From: Ranitomeya imitator
Lineage: Eukaryota
Length of the DNA stretch: 64,000 nt
Assembly (NCBI RefSeq): GCF_032444005.1
Contig: NC_091286.1
Span: forward strand, 375,286,001 to 375,350,000
Reading direction: 5' to 3'
Shown: piece after piece, positions 1 to 18,584 of the stretch
Layout: each line of letters opens with the position of its first letter
How positions within the stretch are numbered: the stretch's first letter is position 1
Position numbers and translations under genes: made by a program
The notes under the pieces: model-generated
What the model was told of the DNA's origin: nothing
The model's database searches: none
Seen by the model: only the letters and a program-made list of their open reading frames with translations

Positions 1-339
1 AGATGCCACCCTTGTCTGAACATAGTGAATCAAGTGTATTGTGCCAGCTATTGCTCAAGTAAGAGGGGGATTTTCATTGATGAAAAGTTTCACACTGGCT
101 AGCATAAAATGGTGTTGTCAAATTACACAGAATATGTAAATGTATGTCCGCAGACCACTTATCAGTCAGATTACCTGTCCAATGCAGAAAGTTCTTACAA
201 TAAGCATGTCAAAATTAGAACTACTTTCAAAGGAGCCACCGTGCTACCCTTTGTAGCTAAAACAGTTCCATTCCTCTGAGAATTCTTCCTACAAGGTATT
301 GGAGCGTCTGTGAGAATTTGAGCATTTGTTAGGTCAGAC

Positions 340-537
340 AGATTTTGGACAAGATTGCTTGGCTATCTCGCTATCTCCAATTTAGTTTATCCCAAAGGTG
401 TCCAATAATGTTTTTTTAGAACTTGCTATGTGCACTGGGCTAGTGTCATTCTGGAAGAGAAACGAGCCCTCAACCAACTATTTCCTCAATATTGGAAGCA
501 CATGATTGCCAAAATGTTTTAAGTGTTAAGATTTCTC
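340..537 (-). mobile_element. Degenerate Tc1/mariner transposase remnant
   Basis: gtcattctggaagagaaacgagccctcaaccaactatttcctcaatattggaagcac resembles the antisense of vertebrate Tc1 transposase sequence; no ORF; recognised from memory only. Confidence 0.4.
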
Positions 538-541
538 TTAA

Positions 542-700
542 AGGGACTCTGTCACCTGAATTTGGAGGGAACAATCTTCAGCCATGGAGGCGGGGTTTTC
601 GGGTGTTTGATTCACCCTTTCCTTACCCGCTGGCTGCAATATTGGATTGAAGTTCATTCTCTGTCCTCCGTAGTACACGCCTGCACAAGGCAATCTTGTG
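542..700. mobile_element. Kolobok/T2-type MITE end fragment
   Basis: TTAA (538-541) followed by AGGGACTCTGTCACC; a similar terminus (ggtgacaggttccct|ttaa) occurs at 52879-52897; right boundary approximate. Confidence 0.5.
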
Positions 701-1244
701 GGCAAGATCTATTTTTAGCCATAATAAGTCTCCTTTTGAGGCATTATGTGCAGATAAGGTCAGAATCACAATGATCTGAAAATTACATATTCTGTGATTC
801 TTATTCATCCAGACCATTCTATGCCTTCCTACCTCTCAAAATGTGAGGCTGACTTAGCTCTTTATTTTTCTGATATGTATAGATAATGGATTTATATACT
901 AGTGCATAATTCTTTCATCAGTTCACATATTCAGGAAGCTGCCAACACATTTCTAACAGAGCAACACAGGTACAGAGAGTACAGAGTACCTTCTAAATTG
1001 CATGAGTTTATGCCTGGCATTGACCCCATTAGTTGCAGAGGCTGAAAGGAGAAAGGATATTTTTACAGATATTTTGTTCCTGTCTATCCTCTTATTGGAA
1101 AAGATACAATGAATAATACATTCATTGTATGTACCTGGACCTGTTGAAGGGCTAGCGCGGCATAAAACATTTGTTGTTCTGAAAGAATACCATCCCCAGC
1201 TCCATGTTGTATAAACTGCTGTAAGAATAAAAGTTTATACAAGA

Positions 1245-2399
1245 CTAGATGGCAGCCCGATTCTAAAGAATCGGGAGTCTAGAATCCATATATACTTTAT
1301 TTATTCAAATGTAAGAATAATACAATTAATAAATAATAGTAAGAAAGAACAAAAAATGGCTGCACTCACCAGCTCTTGACAATTCTTGTTATTTAAGGTA
1401 CAGTTACACAGGATCCATGAACATGCTTATGAGTCACTGGGCCCGCCTCCACGCAGTAGAAACTTGCTGTGAGGTAAAAATTCAAAAATCACACCAAAAT
1501 GGCGGGCGGAGTGTGTCACAGTACGGCGCGTTTCTGATTGGTCGCTCGCAGCAGGCGGCAACCAATCAGACACTGGACACTGTTGACGTCACTTATCTCC
1601 GGACATTAGCTCCGGACATTAGCTCCGGACATTAGCTCCGGACATTATCTCTGCACATTAGCTCCGGACATTAGCTCCGGACATTAGCTCCGGACAAAGC
1701 CACGGAAGTTGGCACAAATTGCAGGAAGTAGTATTCTAGGCAATTAATCTCCGGACATTAGCTCCGGACATTAGCTCCGGACATTAGCTCCGGACATTAG
1801 CTCCGGACAAAGCCACGGAAGTTGGCACAAATTGCAGGAAGTAGTATTCTAGGCAATTATATATTAGACTAGATGGCAGCCCGATTCTAAAGAATCGGGA
1901 GTCTAGAATCCATATATACTTTATTTATTCAAATGTAAGAATAATACAATTAATAAATAATAGTAAGAAAGAACAAAAATAATAGGCAGTATATGGAGAA
2001 AACACCAAACAAAAGTTCAAAATTGGTGTGAAAATGTCACTGAACCACTTCACAACTAAATATATATAGTTTTGGTAAATGGTATTATCATTTTTTTGAC
2101 GAAATTCGGCAGGAGCTTGAAGAGCAACGTCACTGGGCCCGCCTCCACGCAGTAGAAACTTGCTGTGAGGTAAAAATTCAAAAATCACACCAAAATGGCG
2201 GGCGGAGTGTGTCACAGTACGGCACGTTTCTGATTGGTCGCTCGCAGCAGGCGGCAACCAATCAGACACTGGACACTGTTGACGTCACTTATCTCCGGAC
2301 ATTAGCTCCGGACATTAGCTCCGGACATTAGCTCCGGACAAAGCCACGAAAGTTGGCACAAATTGCAGGAAGTAGTATTCTAGGCAATTATATATTAGA
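1245..2399 (-). mobile_element. Non-autonomous Helitron family A, two head-to-tail units (1245-1868, 1869-2399)
   Basis: On the minus strand: A|TCTAATATAT start, 9-bp-stem hairpin CCCGATTCT-tt-AGAATCGGG 7 nt before terminal CTAG|T; inserted between A and T without TSD. Confidence 0.9.
1598..1810. repeat. 13-bp minisatellite (GCTCCGGACATTA)n inside Helitron A
   Basis: Directly visible tandem units; copy number differs among A units (also near 2293-2340, 3995-4040, 4520-4580, 5060-5092). Confidence 0.9.
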
Positions 2400-2575
2400 T
2401 ACTTATGTGAGTCAGAGTGCCACCCTTTCCTCTGCCTGAAGGTTGAGAAAATGTATTCTTCTGCTTTGGAAAAAAATGTGGCAGTCTACAATTTTCCTCT
2501 GAATCTCTAAAATCAATGAGATCCTGTATATGAAAGGTCTGTGTGGCGCTATTGCTGGCACCTTTGCATGGTGTT

Positions 2576-2867
2576 TAGTGATGAGCAAGTATACTCATTG
2601 CTGGGGGGTTTTGGGTGGTATTTGTAACTGCTTGGAGATTTAGTTTTCGTTGCCTCAGCCGCATGATTTACAGCTGATAGACAACTTGAATACATGTGGG
2701 GATTCCCTAGCAACCAGGCAACCCCCACATGTACTCAGGCTGGCTAGCAGCCATAAATAATGCAGTTGCATCAACAAAGACTAAATCTCCGAGCAGTTAC
2801 AAATACTTGGAGACCACCCTAGCGTGCTCGGGAAAACCAGAGCAACGAGTACACTCGCTCATCTCTA
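2576..2867. mobile_element. hAT-type MITE (duplicate copy at about 5329-5620)
   Basis: TIRs tagtgatgagcaagtatactcattgct / agcaacgagtacactcgctcatctcta; degenerate 8-bp TSD atggtgtt / agggggtt. Confidence 0.65.
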
Positions 2868-3040
2868 AGGGGGTTCCCTTTCCCCCCATGCAGGCATGCC
2901 AGCTTAATTACCACCATGGCCCCATTGGCATGGTTCCCTGGCATGATCTTCTACCTCCTGGTGTGAGCACCGCTGTTCCATGCTCTTAAAGGGGCAGCTC
3001 GCGAATATATTAAATGCCCTCAGTTTAAACCTGAAAGACA

Positions 3041-3956
3041 TCTATATATATAATTGTCTAAGGGTTTTTCCGTCTGTCTTTCTGTCTGTCTGTCCTTCTG
3101 TCTGTCTGTCTGTTTGTCTGTCCTGGAAATCCCGCGTCTCTGATTGGTCTGATAACTATGCCCCTTCTAGACAAGCCCAGCCCTATGACACAATGGGTCC
3201 ACAAATCAACGTGTGCCACTTTTGGGTGTAACAGTCTGATATCCTCGCTTGAAGAATCTCATGATAAATGTTATAACTTGCTATCTAAGGGTGAAGTTTC
3301 AGACTTCTCCTGAATATGGCCACACTGGGATCAGGGACTCAGGTAAAGGTCACTGGGCACACCGGGACCAGGGATTTGGATTCAGTACCATGACTGCACT
3401 GAGACCAGTGATTCAGGTTCAGGACACTGGCTGTACGGGGATGAAGTGACCTCACAACTGCACTGATAGAACACCAACTACCCAATGACTCTTTGCTTGA
3501 TGACTACCTAAAGGAGAGATAGTCTTTTATACGAGATGCCTCCCAGCTATTGTCAGGGAGTCTTCTTGCAGGTGTACATAATTATATTAAACTAGATTGT
3601 GGCCCGATTCAAACGCATCGGGTATTCTAGAATATGCATGTCCCCGTAGTATATGTGCCCGTCGCTGATTGGTCGAGGCAACCTTTATGACATCATCATC
3701 GCCATGGCAACCGTTATGACATCTACGTCGATACTGTGCCCGTCGCTGATTGGTCGAGGCCTGGCGGCCTCGACCAATCAGCGACGGGCACAGTATCGAC
3801 GTAGAAACCCGCGTCACTGATTGGTTGAGGCCGCCAGGCCTCGACCAATCAGTGACGGGCACAGTGACGATGATGTCATAAAGGACGTAGACATCCCGCG
3901 TCTGATTAGTCGAGGCCGCCAGGCCTCGACCAATCAGCGACGGGCACAGTATCGAC
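3041..3956 (+). mobile_element. Helitron family B, 3'-truncated rearranged copy
   Basis: A|TCTATATATATAATTG 5' end at 3041, TCTG microsatellite, same internal rearrangement as 5794-6824; ends in a junction with Helitron A at 3956/3957. Confidence 0.8.
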
Positions 3957-5152
3957 AACCAATCAGACACTGGACACTGTTGACGTCACTTATCTCCGGA
4001 CATTAGCTCCGGACATTAGCTCCGGACATTAGCTCCGGACAAAGCCACGGAAGTTGGCACAAATTGCAGGAAGTAGTATTCTAGGCAATTATATATTAGA
4101 TGGCAGCCCGATTCTAAAGAATCGGGAGTCTAGAATCCATATATACTTTATTTATTCAAATGTAAGAATAATACAATTAATAAATAATAGTAAGAAAGAA
4201 CAAAAATAATAGGCTGTATATGGAGAAAACACCAAGCAAAAGTTCAAAATTGGTGTGAAAATGTCACTGAACCACTTCACAACTAAATATATATAGTTTT
4301 GGTAAATGGTATTAACATTTTTTTGACGAAATTCGGCAGGAGCTTGAAGAGCAACGTCACTGGGCCCGCCTCCACGCAGTAGAAACTTGCTGTGAGGTAA
4401 AAATTCAAAAATCACACCAAAATGGCGGGCGGAGTGTGTCACAGTACGGCACGTTTCTGATTGGTCGCTCGCAGCAGGCGGCAACCAATCAGACACTGGA
4501 CACTGTTGACGTCACTTATCTCCGGACATTAGCTCCGGACATTAGCTCCGGACATTAGCTCCGGACATTAGCTCCGGACAAAGCCACGGAAGTTGGCACA
4601 AATTGCAGGAAGTAGTATTCTAGGCAATTATATATTAGATGGCAGCCCGATTCTAAAGAATCGGGAGTCTAGAATCCATATATACTTTATTTATTCAAAT
4701 GTAAGAATAATACAATTAATAGATAATAGTAAGAAAGAACAAAAATAATAGGCAGTATATGGAGAAAACACCAAACAAAAGTTCAAAATTGGTGTGAAAA
4801 TGTCACTGAACCACTTCACAACTAAATATATATAGTTTTGGTAAATGGTATTATCATTTTTTTGACGAAATTCGGCAGGAGCTTGAAGAGCAACGTCACT
4901 GGGCCCGCCTCCACGCAGTAGAAACTTGCTGTGAGGTAAAAATTCAAAAATCACACCAAAATGGCGGGCGGAGTGTGTCACAGTACGGCACGTTTCTGAT
5001 TGGTCGCTCGCAGCAGGCGGCAACCAATCAGACACTGGACACTGTTGACGTCACTTATCTCTGGACATTAGCTCCGGACATTAGCTCCGGACAAAGCCAC
5101 GGAAGTTGGCACAAATTGCAGGAAGTAGTATTCTAGGCAATTATATATTAGA
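3957..5152 (-). mobile_element. Helitron A array: one partial and two full units
   Basis: Near-identical to 1869-2399; junctions at 4097-4100 and 4636-4639; 5' TC at 5151-5152. Confidence 0.9.
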
Positions 5153-5793
5153 TACTTATGTGAGTCAGAGTGCCACCCTTTCCTCTTCCTGAAGGTTGAG
5201 AAAATGTATTCTTCTGCTTTGGAAAAAAATGTGACGGTCTACAATTTTCCTCTGAATCTCTAAAATCAATGAGATCCTGTATATGAAAGGTCTGTGTGGC
5301 GCTATTGCTGGCACCTTTGCATGGTGTTTAGTGATGAGCAAGTATACTCATTGCTGGGGGGTTTTGGGTGGTATTTGTAACTGCTTGGAGATTTAGTTTT
5401 CGTTGCCTCAGCCGCATGATTTACAGCTGATAGACAACTTGAATACATGTGGGGATTCCCTAGCAACCAGGCAACCCCCACATGTACTCAGGCTGGCTAG
5501 CAGCCATAAATAATGCAGTTGCATCAACAAAGACTAAATCTCCGAGCAGTTACAAATACTTGGAGACCACCCTAGCGTGCTCGGGAAAACCAGAGCAACG
5601 AGTACACTCGCTCATCTCTAAGGGGGTTCCCTTTCCCCCCATGCAGGCATGCCAGCTTAATTACCACCATGGCCCCATTGGCATGGTTCCCTGGCATGAT
5701 CTTCTACCTCCTGGTGTGAGCACCGCTGTTCCATGCTCTTAAAGGGGCAGCTCGCGAATATATTAAATGACCTCAGTTTAAACCTGAAAGACA

Positions 5794-6824
5794 TCTATAT
5801 ATATAATTGTCTAAGGGTTTTTCCGTCTGTCTTTCTGTCTGTCTGTCCTTCTGTCTGTCTGTCTGTTTGTCTGTCCTGGAAATCCCGCGTCTCTGATTGG
5901 TCTGATAACTATGCCCCTTCTAGACAAGCCCAGCCCTATGACACAATGGGTCCACAAATCAACGTGTGCCACTTTTGGGTGTAACAGTCTGATATCCTCG
6001 CTTGAAGAATCTCATGATAAATGTTATAACTTGCTATCTAAGGGTGAAGTTTCAGACTTCTCCTGAATATGGCCACACTGGGATCAGCGACTCAGGTAAA
6101 GGTCACTGGGCACACCGGGACCAGGGATTTGGATTCAGTACCATGACTGCACTGAGACCAGTGATTCAGGTTCAGGACACTGGCTGTACGGGGATGAAGT
6201 GACCTCACAACTGCACTGATAGAACACCAACTACCCAATGACTCTTTGCTTGATGACTACCTAAAGGAGAGATAGTCTTTTATACGAGATGCCTCCCAGC
6301 TATTGTCAGGGAGTCTTCTTGCAGGTGTACATAATTATATTAAACTAGATTGTGGCCCGATTCAAACGCATCGGGTATTCTAGAATATGCATGTCCCCGT
6401 AGTATATGTGCCCGTCGCTGATTGGTCGAGGCAACCTTTATGACATCATCATCGCCATGGCAACCGTTATGACATCTACGTCGATACTGTGCCCGTCGCT
6501 GATTGGTCGAGGCCTGGCGGCCTCGACCAATCAGCGACGGGCACAGTATCGACGTAGAAACCCGCGTCACTGATTGGTCGAGGCCGCCAGGCCTCGACCA
6601 ATCAGTGACGGGCACAGCGACGATGATGTCATAAAGGACGTAGACATCCCGCGTCTGATTGGTCGAGGCCGCCAGGGCACAGTATCGACGTAGATGTCAT
6701 AATGGTTGCCATGGCGACGATGATGTCATAAAGGTTGCTTCGACCAATCAGCGACGGGCACATATACTATGGGTACATGCATATTCTAGAATACCTGATG
6801 CGTTTGAATCGGGCCACAATCTAG
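5794..6824 (+). mobile_element. Helitron family B with internal templated insertions
   Basis: A|TC at 5793/5794; 3' hairpin cctgat-gcgtttga-atcggg followed by ccacaatCTAG|T at 6821-6825. Confidence 0.85.
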
Positions 6825-7099
6825 TTTAATATAATTATGTACACCTGCAAGAAGACTCCCTGACAATAGCTGGGAGGCATCTCGTATAAAAGACTATCTC
6901 TCCTTTAGGTAGTCCTCAAGCAAAGAGTCATTGGGTAGTTGGTGTTCTATCAGTGCAGTTGTGAGGTCACTTCATCCCCGTACAGCCAGTGTCCTGAACC
7001 TGAATCACTGGTCTCAGTGCAGTCATGGCACTGAATCCAAATCCCTGGTCCCGGTGTGCCCAGTGACCTTTACCTGATTCCCTGATCCCAGTGTGGCCA
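6070..7099. repeat. 425-bp inverted repeat (6070-6494 vs 6675-7099)
   Basis: Arms align as reverse complements with few mismatches; 180-bp spacer. Confidence 0.9.
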
Positions 7100-7256
7100 G
7101 TTCCCTGTACCTCATTACGTGATCCTAGTGTGATCCTGAATGTAGTTCCCTAGTCCTGGAATGTGGCCAGTTCTGACTCCGAAGTCTCCTGGTCTCAGTG
7201 CGGCCAATCCTTTTCCTGCAGTCCCCTGGTCCCAGTGCAGCCAGTGCCTTAACATT

Positions 7257-7625
7257 CTAGATAAACTTGGCACTCAGGCGGAAGATAAAGTTTAAATTGC
7301 TTTTAATGGCAGTGTAATAGTACAAGTGTGACATTTCGGTCAGATGGGACCTTTAGCAGAATACACACTGCTTTAGGTAAATGTAGAAGGGGACACAGTG
7401 TCCAGTAGTGTAACCTCACAAATTCATAGGTGCTGCGTATATGCTATTGCGGCATGAATGCAGTACCCACTGCTAGTTCAGGGGTGGATATACTATTGCA
7501 TTGCCATTAAAAGCAATTTAAACTTTATCTTCTGTCTGAGTGGCAAGTTTATCTAGAATAGTATTATTCTTCAGACCCTACTTGAGTACCTCAGCATAAG
7601 AGTGCAGCAATTGTACTATCTACAT
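7257..7625. mobile_element. Short PLE-like insertion with fold-back 5' end
   Basis: 7257-7322 is the reverse complement of 7491-7556; flanked by agtgcct(t/g)aacatt (7243-7256, 7626-7639). Confidence 0.55.
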
Positions 7626-9199
7626 AGTGCCTGAACATTGTCCTCTGGTCCTGCAGTGCTCAGTCCTGAGTTCGAAGTCCCCTATTCGCAATGTGGCCAG
7701 TGCCTGATTCAGTATGCTAGACCACCGTTTCTGAACATCGCCCTAATCAGTGTCAGCGAACCTGACCCCTGGAGTCAGCAGCTGCAGTACTGAGTTGAGC
7801 CTAGGAGTGGTACTGGAGCAGTACCTGGTGGCTACCTGTAACCCAGTCTGTCTCTAACATAAAGACCTCCACTGAACACCTGGTAGCTGCTTAGCTATGC
7901 CCCTTCTAGACAAGCCCAGCCCTATGACACAATGGGTTCACAAATCAACGTGTGCCACTTTTGGGTGTAACAGTCTGATATCCTTGCTTGAAGAATCTCA
8001 TGATAAATGTTATAACTTGCTATATAAGGGTGAAGTTTCAGACTTCTCCTGAATATCCTGAGACTCAGAGATCCAAGTCCTTCTACATTTGCTTCAAATT
8101 TCCTTTCGAAGGTCACAGGGAGCTGTTGGAATCTTCTTGGTGGAGGTTCGTGAGAAGCTGTTGAATCCCTCTCTGTGGTGTGAGGGTGGACTGGAGTCAC
8201 ATGGTGAACTGTTAAATTCTTCTTTGTGTTGTGGCAATGTACTGTAGGTACTTGAAGAGCTGTTGGATCCCCTTTGTGATGTGGGGGAGCATTGGAGGCA
8301 AAATGTGAGCTGTAGGATGCTTGCTAGTGTTCTGGAGTGGACTGTAGGAACATTGAAGCTTGAATATCATTGTTCTGATATGTCACAGAAATATGTTAGA
8401 GAGGTTAGATCACTGAACTACATGTTTCATTTTTTAGCAAAAGAAAGTGAGATATTATTAAAAAAAAGTATTGTTTTTACATTTTCATACACACCATAGA
8501 GTCTTTATATATTGTATTTGCTGAGACTCATGTAATGTAACTATGTAGAGCTACATAAAAATATATCCATAAGCAAATAAAATATAAAGGGCAATAGAAG
8601 AGTGTGTCATTACATATTTTAGTAAAGTTCACTAACAGCCAGTCATAACTACCTAGGAAAAGGTTTCCAAGTGCATGTCAAAGCATAATGTGTTCCATTG
8701 TTACCAATCTGAATGAAAGCTATTGTCTTCCATAGCAGGTTATAGTGCTCGATATAAAACAACTGGGAATTAAGAGATCATTTAAAAAATGTAATCTAAC
8801 AGTAACAGCAGTACTCAAAAACAAGAAATAGCCAGACAGTGTGTTCTCTTAAATTTAAGGTGTCATTTACTGTCTCCAAATAACATCTGCAAATCTTACA
8901 AAAAAAAGTTAATGCAGACAAAATAACATTTGTCATAAGTCTAGTACAGATATAAGTAAAGATATAGCAGATGGCTTAATTTTGAGCTATAAACCCCCTG
9001 CTCTATGTCCTTCATTACCCTACTTACTAGTTTCCTCTAGTATAGAAAATTTGATTCCTTATCCATAAATCTCTTAATAATGATGCACCAATGTCAAGGT
9101 TCTACTCTGGGGCTCAATATGGTGACCAATGTCTGGTGGTTGGTTTCTCTCTCTGTTGGACCACAGCTTGTATTGTCTCTGACCACAGCCTGCGTTGTC

Positions 9200-12100
9200 T
9201 GTTGTGAATTCTGTGGCTGAGTTCACTTCTGTGGTCACAAGTGGTATTGCAGTCTCTGGGCTTCCTCCCTCAGGTGTTTTGGTGAGCTCGTTGGCTGCCT
9301 TGCTATTTAGCTCCACCTGAGTCTGTCTTCCTTGCTCCTTGTCAATGTTCCAGTGTTGGATCTGAGCTACTGCATCTTTCCTTGGGCCTGCTGCTCTGCT
9401 AGATAAGTGCTTCTAGTTTGTTTTCTGTTTTTTTCTGTCCAGCTTGCTATTGTCTTTTGCTGGAAGCTCTGAGAAGCAGAGGGGTGCACCGCCGTGCTGT
9501 TAGTTCGGCACGGTGGGTCTTTTTGCCCCTTTGCGTGGTTTTCGTTTTAGGGTTTTTGTAGACTGCATAGTTCTCTTTGCTATCCTCGCTCTGTCTAGAA
9601 TATCGGGCCTCACTTTGCTGAATCTATTTCATTCCTACGTTTGTCTTTTCATCTTGCTAACAGTCATTATATGTGGGGGGCTGCCTATTCCTTTGGGGTA
9701 TTTCTCTGAGGTAAGTCAGGCTTGTATTTCTATCTTCAGGCTAGTCAGCTCCTCAGGCAGTGCCGAGTTGCATAGGTAGTTGTTAGGCGCAATCCACTGC
9801 TGCTTATAGTTGTGTGAGGATAGATCAGGTACTGCAGTCTACAGAGATTCCACGTCTCAGAGCTCGTCCTATTGTTTTTGGTTATTGCCAGATCTCTGTA
9901 TGTGCGCTGATTACTGCACGCTGTGTTGCCTGTTTGCCAGCCATAACAGTACAAGGAGCCACACCAATGATTCCCAATAGAGGGAAAAAAGAAATCCTGA
10001 CATCATTTTTTTTTCTTAGCTCTGTCTTCAGTCATTTTTTTCCCCTAGACATTAGAGTGCTTCAGGACACAGCTGTGGACATGGATATTCAGGCTCTGTG
10101 CTCCTCAATGGATAATCTCGTTGTAAATGTACAAAAGATTCAAGATACTATTGATCAGAAATCGATGCTAGAACCAAGAATTCCGATTCCTGATTTGTTT
10201 TTTGGTGACAGAACTAAGTTCCTGAGCTTCAGAAATAATTGTAAGCTATTTTTGGCCTTGAAACCTCATTCTTCTGGTAATCCTATTCAACAGGTTTTGA
10301 TTATCATTTCTTTTTTGCGCGGCGACCCACAGGACTGGGCGTTTTCTCTTGCACCAGGAGATTCTGCATTGAGTAATGTTGATGCATTTTTCCTGGCGCT
10401 CGGATTGCTTTACGATGAGCCTAATTCAGTGGATCAGGCTGAGCAAAATCTGCTGGCTTTATGCCAGGGTCAGGATGATGTAGAAGTATATTGTCAGAAA
10501 TTTAGGAAATGGTCAGTACTCACTCTGTGGAATGAATCTGCACTAGCGGCTTTGTTCAGAAAGGGTCTCTCTGAAGCTCTTAAGGATGTAATGGTGGGAT
10601 TATCTATGCCTGCTGGTTTGAATGAGTCTATGTCCTTGGCCATTCAGATCGGTCGTCGCTTGCGCGAGCGTAAATCTGTGCACCATCTGGCGGTACTGCC
10701 TGAGAGTAAACCTGAGCCTATGCAGTGCGACAGGACTATGACTAAAGTAGAACGGCAAGAACACAGACGTCTGAACAGACTGTGTTTCTATTGTGGTGAT
10801 TCTACTCATGCTATTTCTAATTGTCCTAAACGCACTAGGCGGTTCGATAGCTCTGCCGTTATTGGTACTGTACAGTCCAAATTCCTTTTGTCCATTACCT
10901 TAATGTGCTCTTTGTCATCGTATTCTGTCATGGCGTTTGTGGATTCAGGCGCTGCCCTGAATCTGATGGATTTGGATTATGCTAAACGTTGTGGATTTTT
11001 CTTGGAGCCTTTGCGGTGTCCTATTCCGTTGAGAGGAATTGATGCTACACCTTTGGCCAAGAATAAGCCTCAGTACTGGGCCCAGCTGACCATGTGCATG
11101 GCTCCTGCACATCAGGAAGTTATTCGCTTTCTGGTACTGCATAATTTGCATGATGTGGTCGTGTTGGGGTTGCCATGGCTGCAAACCCATAATCCAGTAT
11201 TGGATTGGAACTCTATGTCGGTAACCAGCTGGGGTTGTCAGGGAGTACATGGTGATGTTCCATTTTTGTCTATTTCGTCATCCATTCCTTCTGACATCCC
11301 AGAGTTCTTGTCGGACTTTCAGGATGTATTTGAAGAGTCCAAGTCTGATGCCCTACCTCCGCATAGGAATTGTGATTGTGCTATCGATTTGATTCCTGGT
11401 AGTAAATTCCCTAAGGGTCGTTTATTTAATTTGTCCGTACCTGAACACACCGCTATGCGCAGTTATGTGAAGGAATCCCTGGAGAAGGGGCATATTCGCC
11501 CATCGTCGTCACCATTGGGAGCAGGGTTCTTTTTTGTAGCCAAGAAGGATGGTTCGCTAAGACCGTGTATTGATTACCGCCTTCTTAATAAGATCACTGT
11601 TAAGTTTCAGTATCCCTTGCCATTGATTTCTGACTTGTTTGCTCGGATTAAGGGGGCTAGTTGGTTTACTAAGATTGATCTTCGTGGTGCGTATAATCTG
11701 GTGAGAATCAGGCAGGGAGATGAATGGAAAACGGCATTTAATACGCCCGAGGGTCATTTTGAGTATCTGGTGATGCCGTTCGGACTTGCCAATGCTCCAT
11801 CTGTTTTTCAGTCTTTTATGCATGACATTTTCCGTGAGTATCTGGATAAATTCTTGATTGTTTACTTGGATGACATTTTGATCTTCTCAGATGATTGGGA
11901 GTCTCATGTGAAGCAAGTCAGAATGGTTTTCCAGGTACTGCGTGCTAATTCCTTGTTCGTGAAGGGATCAAAGTGTCTCTTCGGTGTGCAGAAAGTTTCA
12001 TTTTTGGGGTTCATCTTTTCCCCTTCTACTATCGAGATGGATCCGGTTAAGGTTCAGGCCATCCAGGATTGGACTCAGCCGACATCTCTAAAAAGTCTGC

Positions 12101-18446: not shown

Positions 18447-18584
18447 NNNNNNNNNNNNNNNNNNNNNNNNNNNNNNNNNNNNNNNNNNNNNNNNNNNNNN
18501 NNNNNNNNNNNNNNNNNNNNNNNNNNNNNNNNNNNNNNNNNNNNNNNNNNNNNNNNNNNNNNNNNNNNNNNNNNNNNNNNNNNN
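18447..18584. other. Assembly gap (138 N)
   Basis: Run of N. Confidence 1.

What the first reader, a model, noticed from the sequence alone, without database searches (positions are those of the whole stretch)
5794..8056. Helitron containing copies of its own downstream flank (three template switches)
Helitron B breaks at 5902 and, after 6 filler nt, carries a direct 162-bp copy (5909-6070) of DNA lying about 1.1 kb beyond its 3' end (7895-8056). It then carries an inverted 425-bp copy of its own 3' half plus 275 bp of 3' flank (6070-6494 vs 6675-7099), and finally resumes forward to CTAG. All captured DNA is local, so this may be a snapshot of Helitron sequence capture or of FoSTeS/MMBIR seeded by the element's internal inverted repeats.
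Basis: partly seen in the sequence, partly recalled or inferred. Interest (0 to 1): 0.72.

Follow-up and report, generated by a model that had tools for sequence, protein, structure and literature searches.

The report
Template-switch scar inside a frog Helitron
A small non-coding Helitron transposon in a poison-frog genome carries a real 606-base patch copied from its own tail and nearby flank. It looks like a scar of error-prone copying at the element's hairpin-forming motif, not a transposon caught capturing and spreading host DNA.

Summary
5909-6070 is a direct copy of 7895-8056 (3 differences in 162). 6070-6494 is an inverted copy of 6675-7099 (10 in 425, half at CpG sites).

Short-read contigs of other family copies run from 5902 straight into the palindrome at about 6509. 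So the original element was 5794-5902 plus 6509-6824, and 5903-6508 is a 606-nt insert:
- 6 filler bases;
- S, the 162-nt downstream copy;
- the 275-nt 3' flank, inverted;
- about 150 nt of the element's own 3' end, inverted;
- a return through a 35-nt CCAAT palindrome, with the same 10-nt motif on both sides of the insert.

The S-to-inverted-flank joint occurs in contigs from two independent samples. The joint at 5902/5909 could not be checked.

That copy sits in a segmental tandem duplication that also carries non-Helitron flank and Helitron A copies, so it arose by duplication, not transposition. Contig depth over the insert is thousands of times lower than over the Helitron, so the chimera has not spread.

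Best reading: one replication- or repair-linked template-switch event (FoSTeS/MMBIR type), followed by a tandem duplication and a 20-nt palindrome deletion. The scan noted similar scars beside Helitrons elsewhere in this genome, but not this one.

The parts
5794..5902 (+). Helitron B 5' segment: TC start after A5793, AT-rich left end, (GTCT)n 5825-5875, and the left arm (5893-5902) of the first CCAAT palindrome, where the element is interrupted
   Evidence: joints show other copies continuing from 5902 into the palindrome
5903..5908 (.). 6 filler bases at junction 1 (only 3 if the copy is taken to start at 7892 with one mismatch)
5909..6070 (+). Direct copy (S) of 7895-8056, 3 differences in 162
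6071..6345 (-). Inverted copy of the element's 3' flank F (6825-7099). Junction 2 with S shares one T at 6070
   Evidence: the junction is present in contigs X2 record 10, X1 record 8 and X7 record 28
6346..6498 (-). Inverted copy of Helitron B's 3' part, including a perfect copy of the terminal hairpin (6356-6375) and the CTAG
6499..6533 (.). 35-nt CCAAT palindrome in which the third switch, back to the forward strand, must lie. 6499-6508 repeats 5893-5902 exactly; 15 nt match with one mismatch
   Evidence: joint 5902->6516
6475..6558 (.). Perfect 84-nt palindrome (40-nt arms, 4-nt loop) created by the switch. It extends beyond the family's normal palindrome
   Evidence: (I5)
6509..6824 (+). 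Rest of Helitron B: palindrome modules, 3' hairpin 6794-6813 (one G-T wobble), CTAG 6821-6824, followed by T6825. 20 nt are missing at 6676/6677 compared with copy 1
6825..7099 (+). Flank F, the source of the inverted copy. A 37-nt tandem repeat (7042-7132) runs across 7099/7100, so this side is the original
   Evidence: (D3); organism B contig 6992-7308
7100..7894 (+). Segment M between the two sources, not copied into the element
7895..8056 (+). Source of the direct copy S. It is continuous with its surroundings in organism B
   Evidence: X3 record 23 (7743-8300)
3041..3956 (+). Second, upstream copy of the chimera's left part (5' end, filler, S, inverted F, inverted 3' part, palindrome modules). 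It ends at 3956, where it joins Helitron A's palindrome arm at 3957
   Evidence: 5 differences in 1376
1747..3956 (+). Upstream copy of the segmental tandem duplication, matching 4518-6690: Helitron A copies, non-Helitron flank X (2400-3040, matching 5153-5793) and the chimera's left part
   Evidence: 2177 nt, 98.7%
3957..5152 (-). Head-to-tail array of Helitron A (a partial copy plus two full copies of about 540 nt) between the two copies of the chimera. A second array lies at 1246-2399

Best explanation
A resident non-autonomous Helitron of about 445 nt (5794-5902 plus 6509-6824, plus 20 nt lost later) suffered one copying accident at its first CCAAT palindrome. The step order below is inferred. 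A DNA end that had just copied a palindrome arm paired with the matching arm of a downstream module on the opposite strand. It copied about 460 nt backwards, through the element's 3' end and 275 nt of flank. It let go at 7099 and re-primed at 8056 on a single shared base, then copied 162 nt in the normal direction. After 6 untemplated or slipped bases it returned to the stall point at 5902. The result is a 606-nt templated insert with all source sequences still in place, which is the pattern of fork-stalling/template-switching or microhomology-mediated break-induced replication. Later, a segment of about 2.75 kb covering Helitron A copies, unique flank and the chimera's left part was duplicated in tandem. 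That joint (3956|3957) again lies beside palindromes. One palindrome half (20 nt) was then deleted from the downstream copy. Shown: the anatomy, the family's normal structure, the order of events from divergence, and the reality of junction 2. Inferred: the direction of synthesis and a replication or repair origin.
For: Repeats and junctions. Normal continuity of the family from 5902 into the palindrome: joints 5902->6516 (with 8 bases that match 6509-6516 apart from 2), 5902->6601/6608 and 5899->6607. Return homology: 5893-5902 equals 6499-6508. Hairpin potential: DNA fold of 6460-6700 gives -102.6 kcal/mol, z = -16. Single event: S diverges by 3/162 and the arms by 9-10/425, which is equal within error, and the two pieces abut with 1 nt of overlap. 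Real age rather than assembly error: half of the arm differences are CpG transitions. The tandem copies differ by only 5/1376, so that duplication is younger. The right-hand copies are the originals: a 37-nt repeat spans 7099/7100, and organism B contigs cover 6992-7308 and 7743-8300 without a break. Junction 2 is carried by a 335-nt contig found in both runs of sample S1, and organism C contig 6059-6223 carries 12 S-side bases. No spread: depth is 70-250 over S and inverted F against 1e5-1.5e6 over the Helitron body, and the window holds no other copy. Inverted-repeat-mediated iterative template switching is an established class (PMC4352052, PMC11293582).
Against: Junction 1 (5902/5909) and the tandem-duplication joint (3956/3957) were not seen in any listed contig, so they rest on the assembly alone. 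The S1 contig that carries junction 2 enters S from 7751-7894, not from the Helitron 5' end. That is either a de Bruijn graph shortcut through the 162-nt repeat or a different arrangement in that animal. Contig depths over inverted F (11-17) are no higher than over nearby single-copy DNA (7-20), which does not obviously fit three copies of F in that sample, although the tool warns that contig depth cannot be used as copy number. No empty or ancestral allele was recovered. A fork-based and a break-repair origin cannot be told apart from sequence.
Confidence: 0.62

Rival explanations
1. Helitron-driven capture (filler-DNA model). A break made during Helitron transposition or by the RepHel enzyme inside the element was repaired using nearby DNA as filler. 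The chimera, with both termini intact, is a capture intermediate that can be or has been mobilised.
For: Host flank DNA now lies between an intact 5' TC end and an intact 3' hairpin/CTAG end. The filler-DNA model predicts internal insertions with short junction homology (PMC6544945). The family is highly amplified and forms head-to-tail joints elsewhere, so it was active.
Against: No breakpoint lies at a RepHel cleavage site. The breaks sit at internal palindromes. The inverted copy crosses the 3' terminus into the flank without a break, so the element was already integrated. The only other copy lies in a duplication that includes non-Helitron DNA. Insert depth is low. Experimentally shown capture is 3'-end bypass, which gives forward-oriented flank beyond the old end (PMC4778049), and that is not seen here.
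Confidence: 0.15
2. Two or more separate events: first an inverted (fold-back) duplication at the palindrome, then an unrelated insertion of S, or the reverse order.
For: Each junction type is known to arise alone. The divergence estimates rest on only 3 and 10 differences, so equal age is not proven.
Against: S and inverted F abut directly with 1 nt of overlap and no extra sequence. Both sources lie within 1.3 kb downstream, and their divergences are equal within error. One multi-switch event is simpler.
Confidence: 0.15
3. Assembly artefact: chimeric or palindromic long reads, or two haplotypes laid in tandem, produced the inverted copy and/or the 2.75-kb tandem repeat.
For: Palindromes and tandem Helitrons are hard to assemble. 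Junctions 1 and 3956/3957 were not verified. Depth in sample S1 does not clearly show the extra copies.
Against: The copies differ by about 2%, with a CpG-transition bias, unlike artefactual duplicates. Junction 2 is present in short-read contigs from two samples and two studies. There is no gap nearby, the nearest N run being 18447-18584. For the tandem repeat alone, an artefact or a polymorphism remains possible, at perhaps 0.2.
Confidence: 0.06

Closest known systems
FoSTeS / MMBIR complex rearrangements, including inverted-repeat-mediated DUP-TRP/INV-DUP (PMC4352052, PMC11293582)
   Same: Several junctions in cis. Nearby templates are copied in both orientations while the sources stay in place. 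One switch goes through inverted-repeat homology, the others through 0-1 nt of microhomology with a short insertion.
   Different: The scale is hundreds of bases rather than kilobases to megabases. The inverted repeats are 35-nt palindromes inside one transposon. The result is an insertion, not a triplication. It is a germline event in a frog that is at least common: junction 2 was found in two samples under two species labels.
Helitron filler-DNA capture (model summarised in PMC6544945)
   Same: Foreign DNA lies inside the element between intact termini. The junctions show little homology.
   Different: The 'captured' DNA is the element's own 3' end and its immediate flank. There is no sign that the chimera has transposed or amplified.
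Helitron 3'-end bypass / read-through transduction (Helraiser, PMC4778049)
   Same: DNA just 3' of the element becomes associated with it.
   Different: Here the flank is inverted and lies upstream of an intact old 3' end, and no new 3' terminus was formed.
Quasipalindrome-associated template switching, which perfects imperfect hairpins
   Same: A switch within a near-palindrome turned it into a perfect, longer palindrome (6475-6558).
   Different: Classical cases copy a few bases. Here synthesis ran on for about 460 nt and then made two further jumps.

Membership tests
Helitron (non-autonomous) | 5'-TC and 3'-CTRR termini without terminal inverted repeats | tested here: met
   TC at 5794-5795 and CTAG at 6821-6824. 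The same left-end motif is found at 3041. Criteria as in PMC4778049 and PMC12001565.
Helitron (non-autonomous) | Short hairpin about 10-12 nt upstream of the 3' end | tested here: met
   Hairpin at 6794-6813, 11 nt from the end, with one G-T wobble. It is perfect in the inverted copies at 6356-6375 and 3603-3622.
Helitron (non-autonomous) | Insertion between A and T, no target-site duplication | tested here: inconclusive
   A5793 and T6825 flank the element, but no empty site was recovered.
Helitron (non-autonomous) | Dispersed multi-copy family with the same termini and unrelated flanks | tested here: met
   summed depth is 1e5-1.5e6 over 6216-6819. At the 3' terminus (6344) 231 contigs end in unrelated AT-rich flanks. 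Head-to-tail joints 6825->5793/5798 are seen.
Helitron (non-autonomous) | Autonomous RepHel-encoding partner in the genome | not tested
   None lies in 1-9300.
Helitron capture by 3'-end bypass | Flank in forward orientation beyond the old 3' end, closed by a new terminus | tested here: not met
   The flank copy is inverted and lies inside the element, and the old terminus is intact.
Helitron filler-DNA capture | Foreign DNA internal to the element with short junction homology | tested here: met
   The 606-nt insert 5903-6508 has junction homology of 0, 1 and 10-15 nt.
Helitron filler-DNA capture | Chimera mobilised: the same insert at other loci with Helitron-type flanks | tested here: not met
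   The only other copy lies in an adjacent segmental duplication. Insert depth is near single-copy level. The test is limited to this window and contig depth.
FoSTeS/MMBIR-type template-switch rearrangement | Two or more junctions in cis joining nearby segments, in direct and inverted orientation, with the sources retained | tested here: met
   There are three junctions. The sources lie within 2.3 kb and are all still present.
FoSTeS/MMBIR-type template-switch rearrangement | Microhomology or short insertions at the junctions | tested here: met
   6 filler bases, a 1-nt overlap, and a 10-nt exact match (15 nt with one mismatch).
FoSTeS/MMBIR-type template-switch rearrangement | Arises during replication or break-induced replication | not testable with these tools
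   Sequence alone cannot separate fork stalling from break repair.

The most novel reading that the evidence does not exclude
The chimera may be a true first step of Helitron 'filler-DNA' capture seen next to its source DNA: an element with both termini intact that now carries 437 nt of host flank. The family's CCAAT palindromes would then be recurrent hot spots that both scramble Helitrons and load them with local DNA in this giant frog genome. The contig joining 7751-7894 to S and then to inverted F could then mark an ongoing polymorphism, either unequal exchange or a circle between the two S copies (a 1986-nt unit).
Probability: 0.12. Interest if true: 0.6.

Novelty: new member of a known kind. 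Interest (0 to 1): 0.35.

Why it matters
[quoted passage not shown] Here every source sequence sits within 2.3 kb, so each junction can be read exactly. The breaks map to the element's own hairpin-forming CCAAT palindromes, not to its termini. That points to ordinary replication or repair errors at transposon-borne palindromes as a way Helitrons become chimeric. It also suggests a simple genome-wide test: are templated insertions enriched at this motif? As a single, non-mobilised case it is instructive rather than surprising.

Tried and rejected
- **Other Helitron B copies in the window.** BLAST of 5301-8500 and 1-12000 against the window, plus hairpin and left-end pattern scans, found none outside 1246-6824. 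The family's normal structure had to come from read contigs.
- **Earlier scan notes by sequence**: blank.
- **Contig depth as copy number for S and F:** rejected as unreliable. The tool warns against it, and contigs that fit two places are laid at one.
- **Two independent Helitron insertions head to head:** rejected, because 275 nt of flank is duplicated with the element.
- **Hairpin-capped break with breakage-fusion:** rejected, because the inverted copy stops after about 460 nt and the chromosome continues normally.
- **Left arrangement (S next to inverted F) as ancestral:** rejected, because the 37-nt repeat crosses 7099/7100 and organism B has the right-hand continuity.
- **Coding potential in 1-9300**: only short ORFs inside repeats, so no gene is involved.
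- **The upstream tandem duplication as one simple jump:** not achieved. The two copies hold different numbers of Helitron A units, so later array changes must be assumed.

Full report
**Observation**

- The repeat finder gives a direct pair 5906-6070 / 7892-8056 (165 nt, 98%) and inverted arms 6070-6494 / 6675-7099 (425 nt, 98%). A self-BLAST agrees.
- Read base by base, clean homology of the direct copy starts at 5909/7895, with 3 differences in 162. Six unmatched bases lie between it and 5902.
- The arms differ at 10 of 425 sites. Five of these are in CpG context. One (6088) is private to this copy.

**Is it a Helitron?**

The element starts TC at 5794 after an A and ends CTAG at 6821-6824 before a T. 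It has a hairpin at 6794-6813, 11 nt from the end. These are the criteria used for bat and Xenopus Helitrons (PMC4778049, PMC12001565).

A related element, Helitron A, lies on the minus strand at 1246-2399 and 3957-5152. It shares the left end, a CCAAT palindrome and the 3' hairpin type.

Contigs of four public runs were laid on 3800-8300.
- Summed depth over 6216-6819 is 1e5 to 1.5e6.
- At the 3' terminus (6344), 231 contigs run on into unrelated AT-rich DNA.
- Head-to-tail joints 6825->5793/5798 are seen.

So this is a very abundant family with these termini. Earlier notes of the scan say the genome is a poison frog rich in such elements. I did not check the species myself.

**Normal structure and the exact insert**

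In other copies the 5' segment runs from 5902 straight into the palindrome. The joints are 5902->6516 with 8 intervening bases that match 6509-6516 apart from 2, plus 5902->6601/6608 and 5899->6607.

The forward modules of the element read: a short GC-rich leader, the palindrome, a fixed tail, then the next module.

So the original element was 5794-5902 plus 6509-6824. The insert is 5903-6508 (606 nt) and consists of:
- 6 filler bases;
- S (5909-6070);
- the inverted flank F (6071-6345);
- the inverted 3' part of the element (6346-6498);
- the 10-nt arm 6499-6508, which repeats 5893-5902 exactly (15 nt match with one mismatch).

The third switch must lie inside the 35-nt palindrome 6499-6533. 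It produced a perfect 84-nt palindrome (6475-6558) that is longer than the family's own.

This region folds very strongly as single-stranded DNA: -102.6 kcal/mol, z = -16.

**Which side is original**

A 37-nt tandem repeat (7042-7132) runs across 7099/7100. Contigs of organism B, about 94% identical, cover 6992-7308 and 7743-8300 without a break. The right-hand F, M and S are therefore the sources.

The left part of the chimera is present twice. 1747-3956 matches 4518-6690 (2177 nt at 98.7%), and 2548-3923 matches 5301-6676 at 99.6%.

The duplicated block holds Helitron A copies, 640 nt of non-Helitron flank (2400-3040, matching 5153-5793) and the chimera up to its palindrome modules. At 3956|3957 the Helitron B tail is joined to the right arm of Helitron A's palindrome with at most 1 nt of homology. 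This is a segmental duplication, not a transposed copy.

Copy 1 keeps 20 nt (3924-3943) that copy 2 lacks at 6676/6677. One palindrome half was therefore deleted later, and the inverted arms were originally about 39 nt longer.

**Order and age**

- S diverges by 1.9% and the arms by 2.1-2.4%.
- The tandem copies diverge by 0.36%.
- Organism B differs from the window by about 6% (33 other letters in 558).

The chimera therefore formed once, later than the split from organism B by this crude measure. The tandem duplication is much younger. The CpG-transition bias argues for real evolutionary age, not assembly error.

**Read support**

Junction 2 (S to inverted F at 6070) is supported in two independent samples from two studies.
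- It is carried by a 335-nt contig found in both runs of sample S1: X2 record 10, laid on 7751-7894 and 5909-6099, and X1 record 8.
- In organism C, which is nearly identical to the window, it is carried by the contig 6059-6223. Only 12 of its bases lie on the S side, below the tool's 31-nt bridging rule.

Junction 1 and 3956/3957 were not among the listed pieces.

The S1 contig enters S from 7751-7894, not from the Helitron 5' end. This may be a graph shortcut. The short link from a very high-copy 5' segment is the kind of path that contig builders remove, and the downstream contig starts at 8052, which hints at a local tangle. Or it may be a real alternative allele. I could not decide between these.

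**Mechanism**

The best fit is a multi-step template switch of the FoSTeS/MMBIR kind, seeded by the element's palindromes. One switch uses inverted-repeat homology. Two use 0-1 nt of homology with a short filler. All templates lie within 2.3 kb and are retained (compare PMC4352052 and PMC11293582).

Capture by the Helitron machinery is less likely.
- The breaks are not at the termini.
- The inverted copy crosses the 3' terminus into the flank.
- Experimentally shown capture is forward read-through past the 3' end (PMC4778049).
- The insert is not amplified: depth is 70-250 against 1e5-1e6.

The filler-DNA model (PMC6544945) is itself break repair, so it differs from my reading only in what caused the break and in whether the chimera later moved. 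Nothing shows that it did.

**Verdict**

This is a real, cleanly readable local rearrangement of a known kind inside an ordinary non-autonomous Helitron. It was later caught up in a tandem duplication. It is instructive, because every source lies next door, but it is not a new mechanism. Similar scars beside Helitrons were noted elsewhere in this genome (s1-294704, s1-294857). Those notes are leads for a hot-spot survey, not evidence here.

The N run at 18447-18584 was left untouched.

Noticed in passing
window 1246-2399 and 3957-5152 (minus strand): Helitron A forms head-to-tail arrays. One joint is exact, CTAG directly followed by TC (1868/1869). Two joints lack 5 nt (4100/4101, 4639/4640). 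The copy number of its internal 13-nt repeat varies from 3 to 17, and there is a 113-nt internal duplication at 1636-1859.
   Followed up: partly
window 3956|3957: The joint of the 2.75-kb tandem duplication links a Helitron B palindrome tail to the right arm of Helitron A's CCAAT palindrome with at most 1 nt of homology. The two copies hold different numbers of A units, so one simple duplication does not explain the array.
   Followed up: partly
window 7751-7894 + 5909-6099 (X2 record 10 / X1 record 8): A 335-nt short-read contig joins the DNA upstream of the S source to an S of the copied type and then to the inverted flank. The assembly has no such arrangement. It is either a graph shortcut or a structural variant between the two S copies (1986-nt unit).
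   Followed up: partly
window 5371-5559 and 2618-2806: A foldback of 91-nt arms (80% complementary, 7-nt spacer) inside the duplicated flank. Summed contig depth is 3e5-1e6 in all four runs, so it is probably a very abundant MITE-like element.
   Followed up: no
window 7254-7322 / 7491-7559: A 69-nt inverted repeat (93%) with a 168-nt spacer, inside the uncopied segment M. It may be a small foldback element.
   Followed up: no
window 5893-5902, 6499-6533, 6570-6605 and Helitron A 1537-1569: The palindrome arms contain CTGATTGG, which from memory is the classical Y-box or inverted CCAAT motif. Each module is therefore a pair of facing CCAAT boxes, which may make these Helitrons promoter-like.
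   Followed up: no
window 4090 (X7 record 24 loose end): In organism C a contig joins a Helitron B-type 5' end, in reverse orientation, directly to a Helitron A-type 3' end. Mixed A/B head-to-tail arrays therefore exist elsewhere.
   Followed up: no
window 6796 versus 6373 and 3620: The hairpin at the element's working 3' end carries a CpG-type change that leaves a G-T wobble. Both inverted copies keep the perfect hairpin.
   Followed up: no
   Followed up: no
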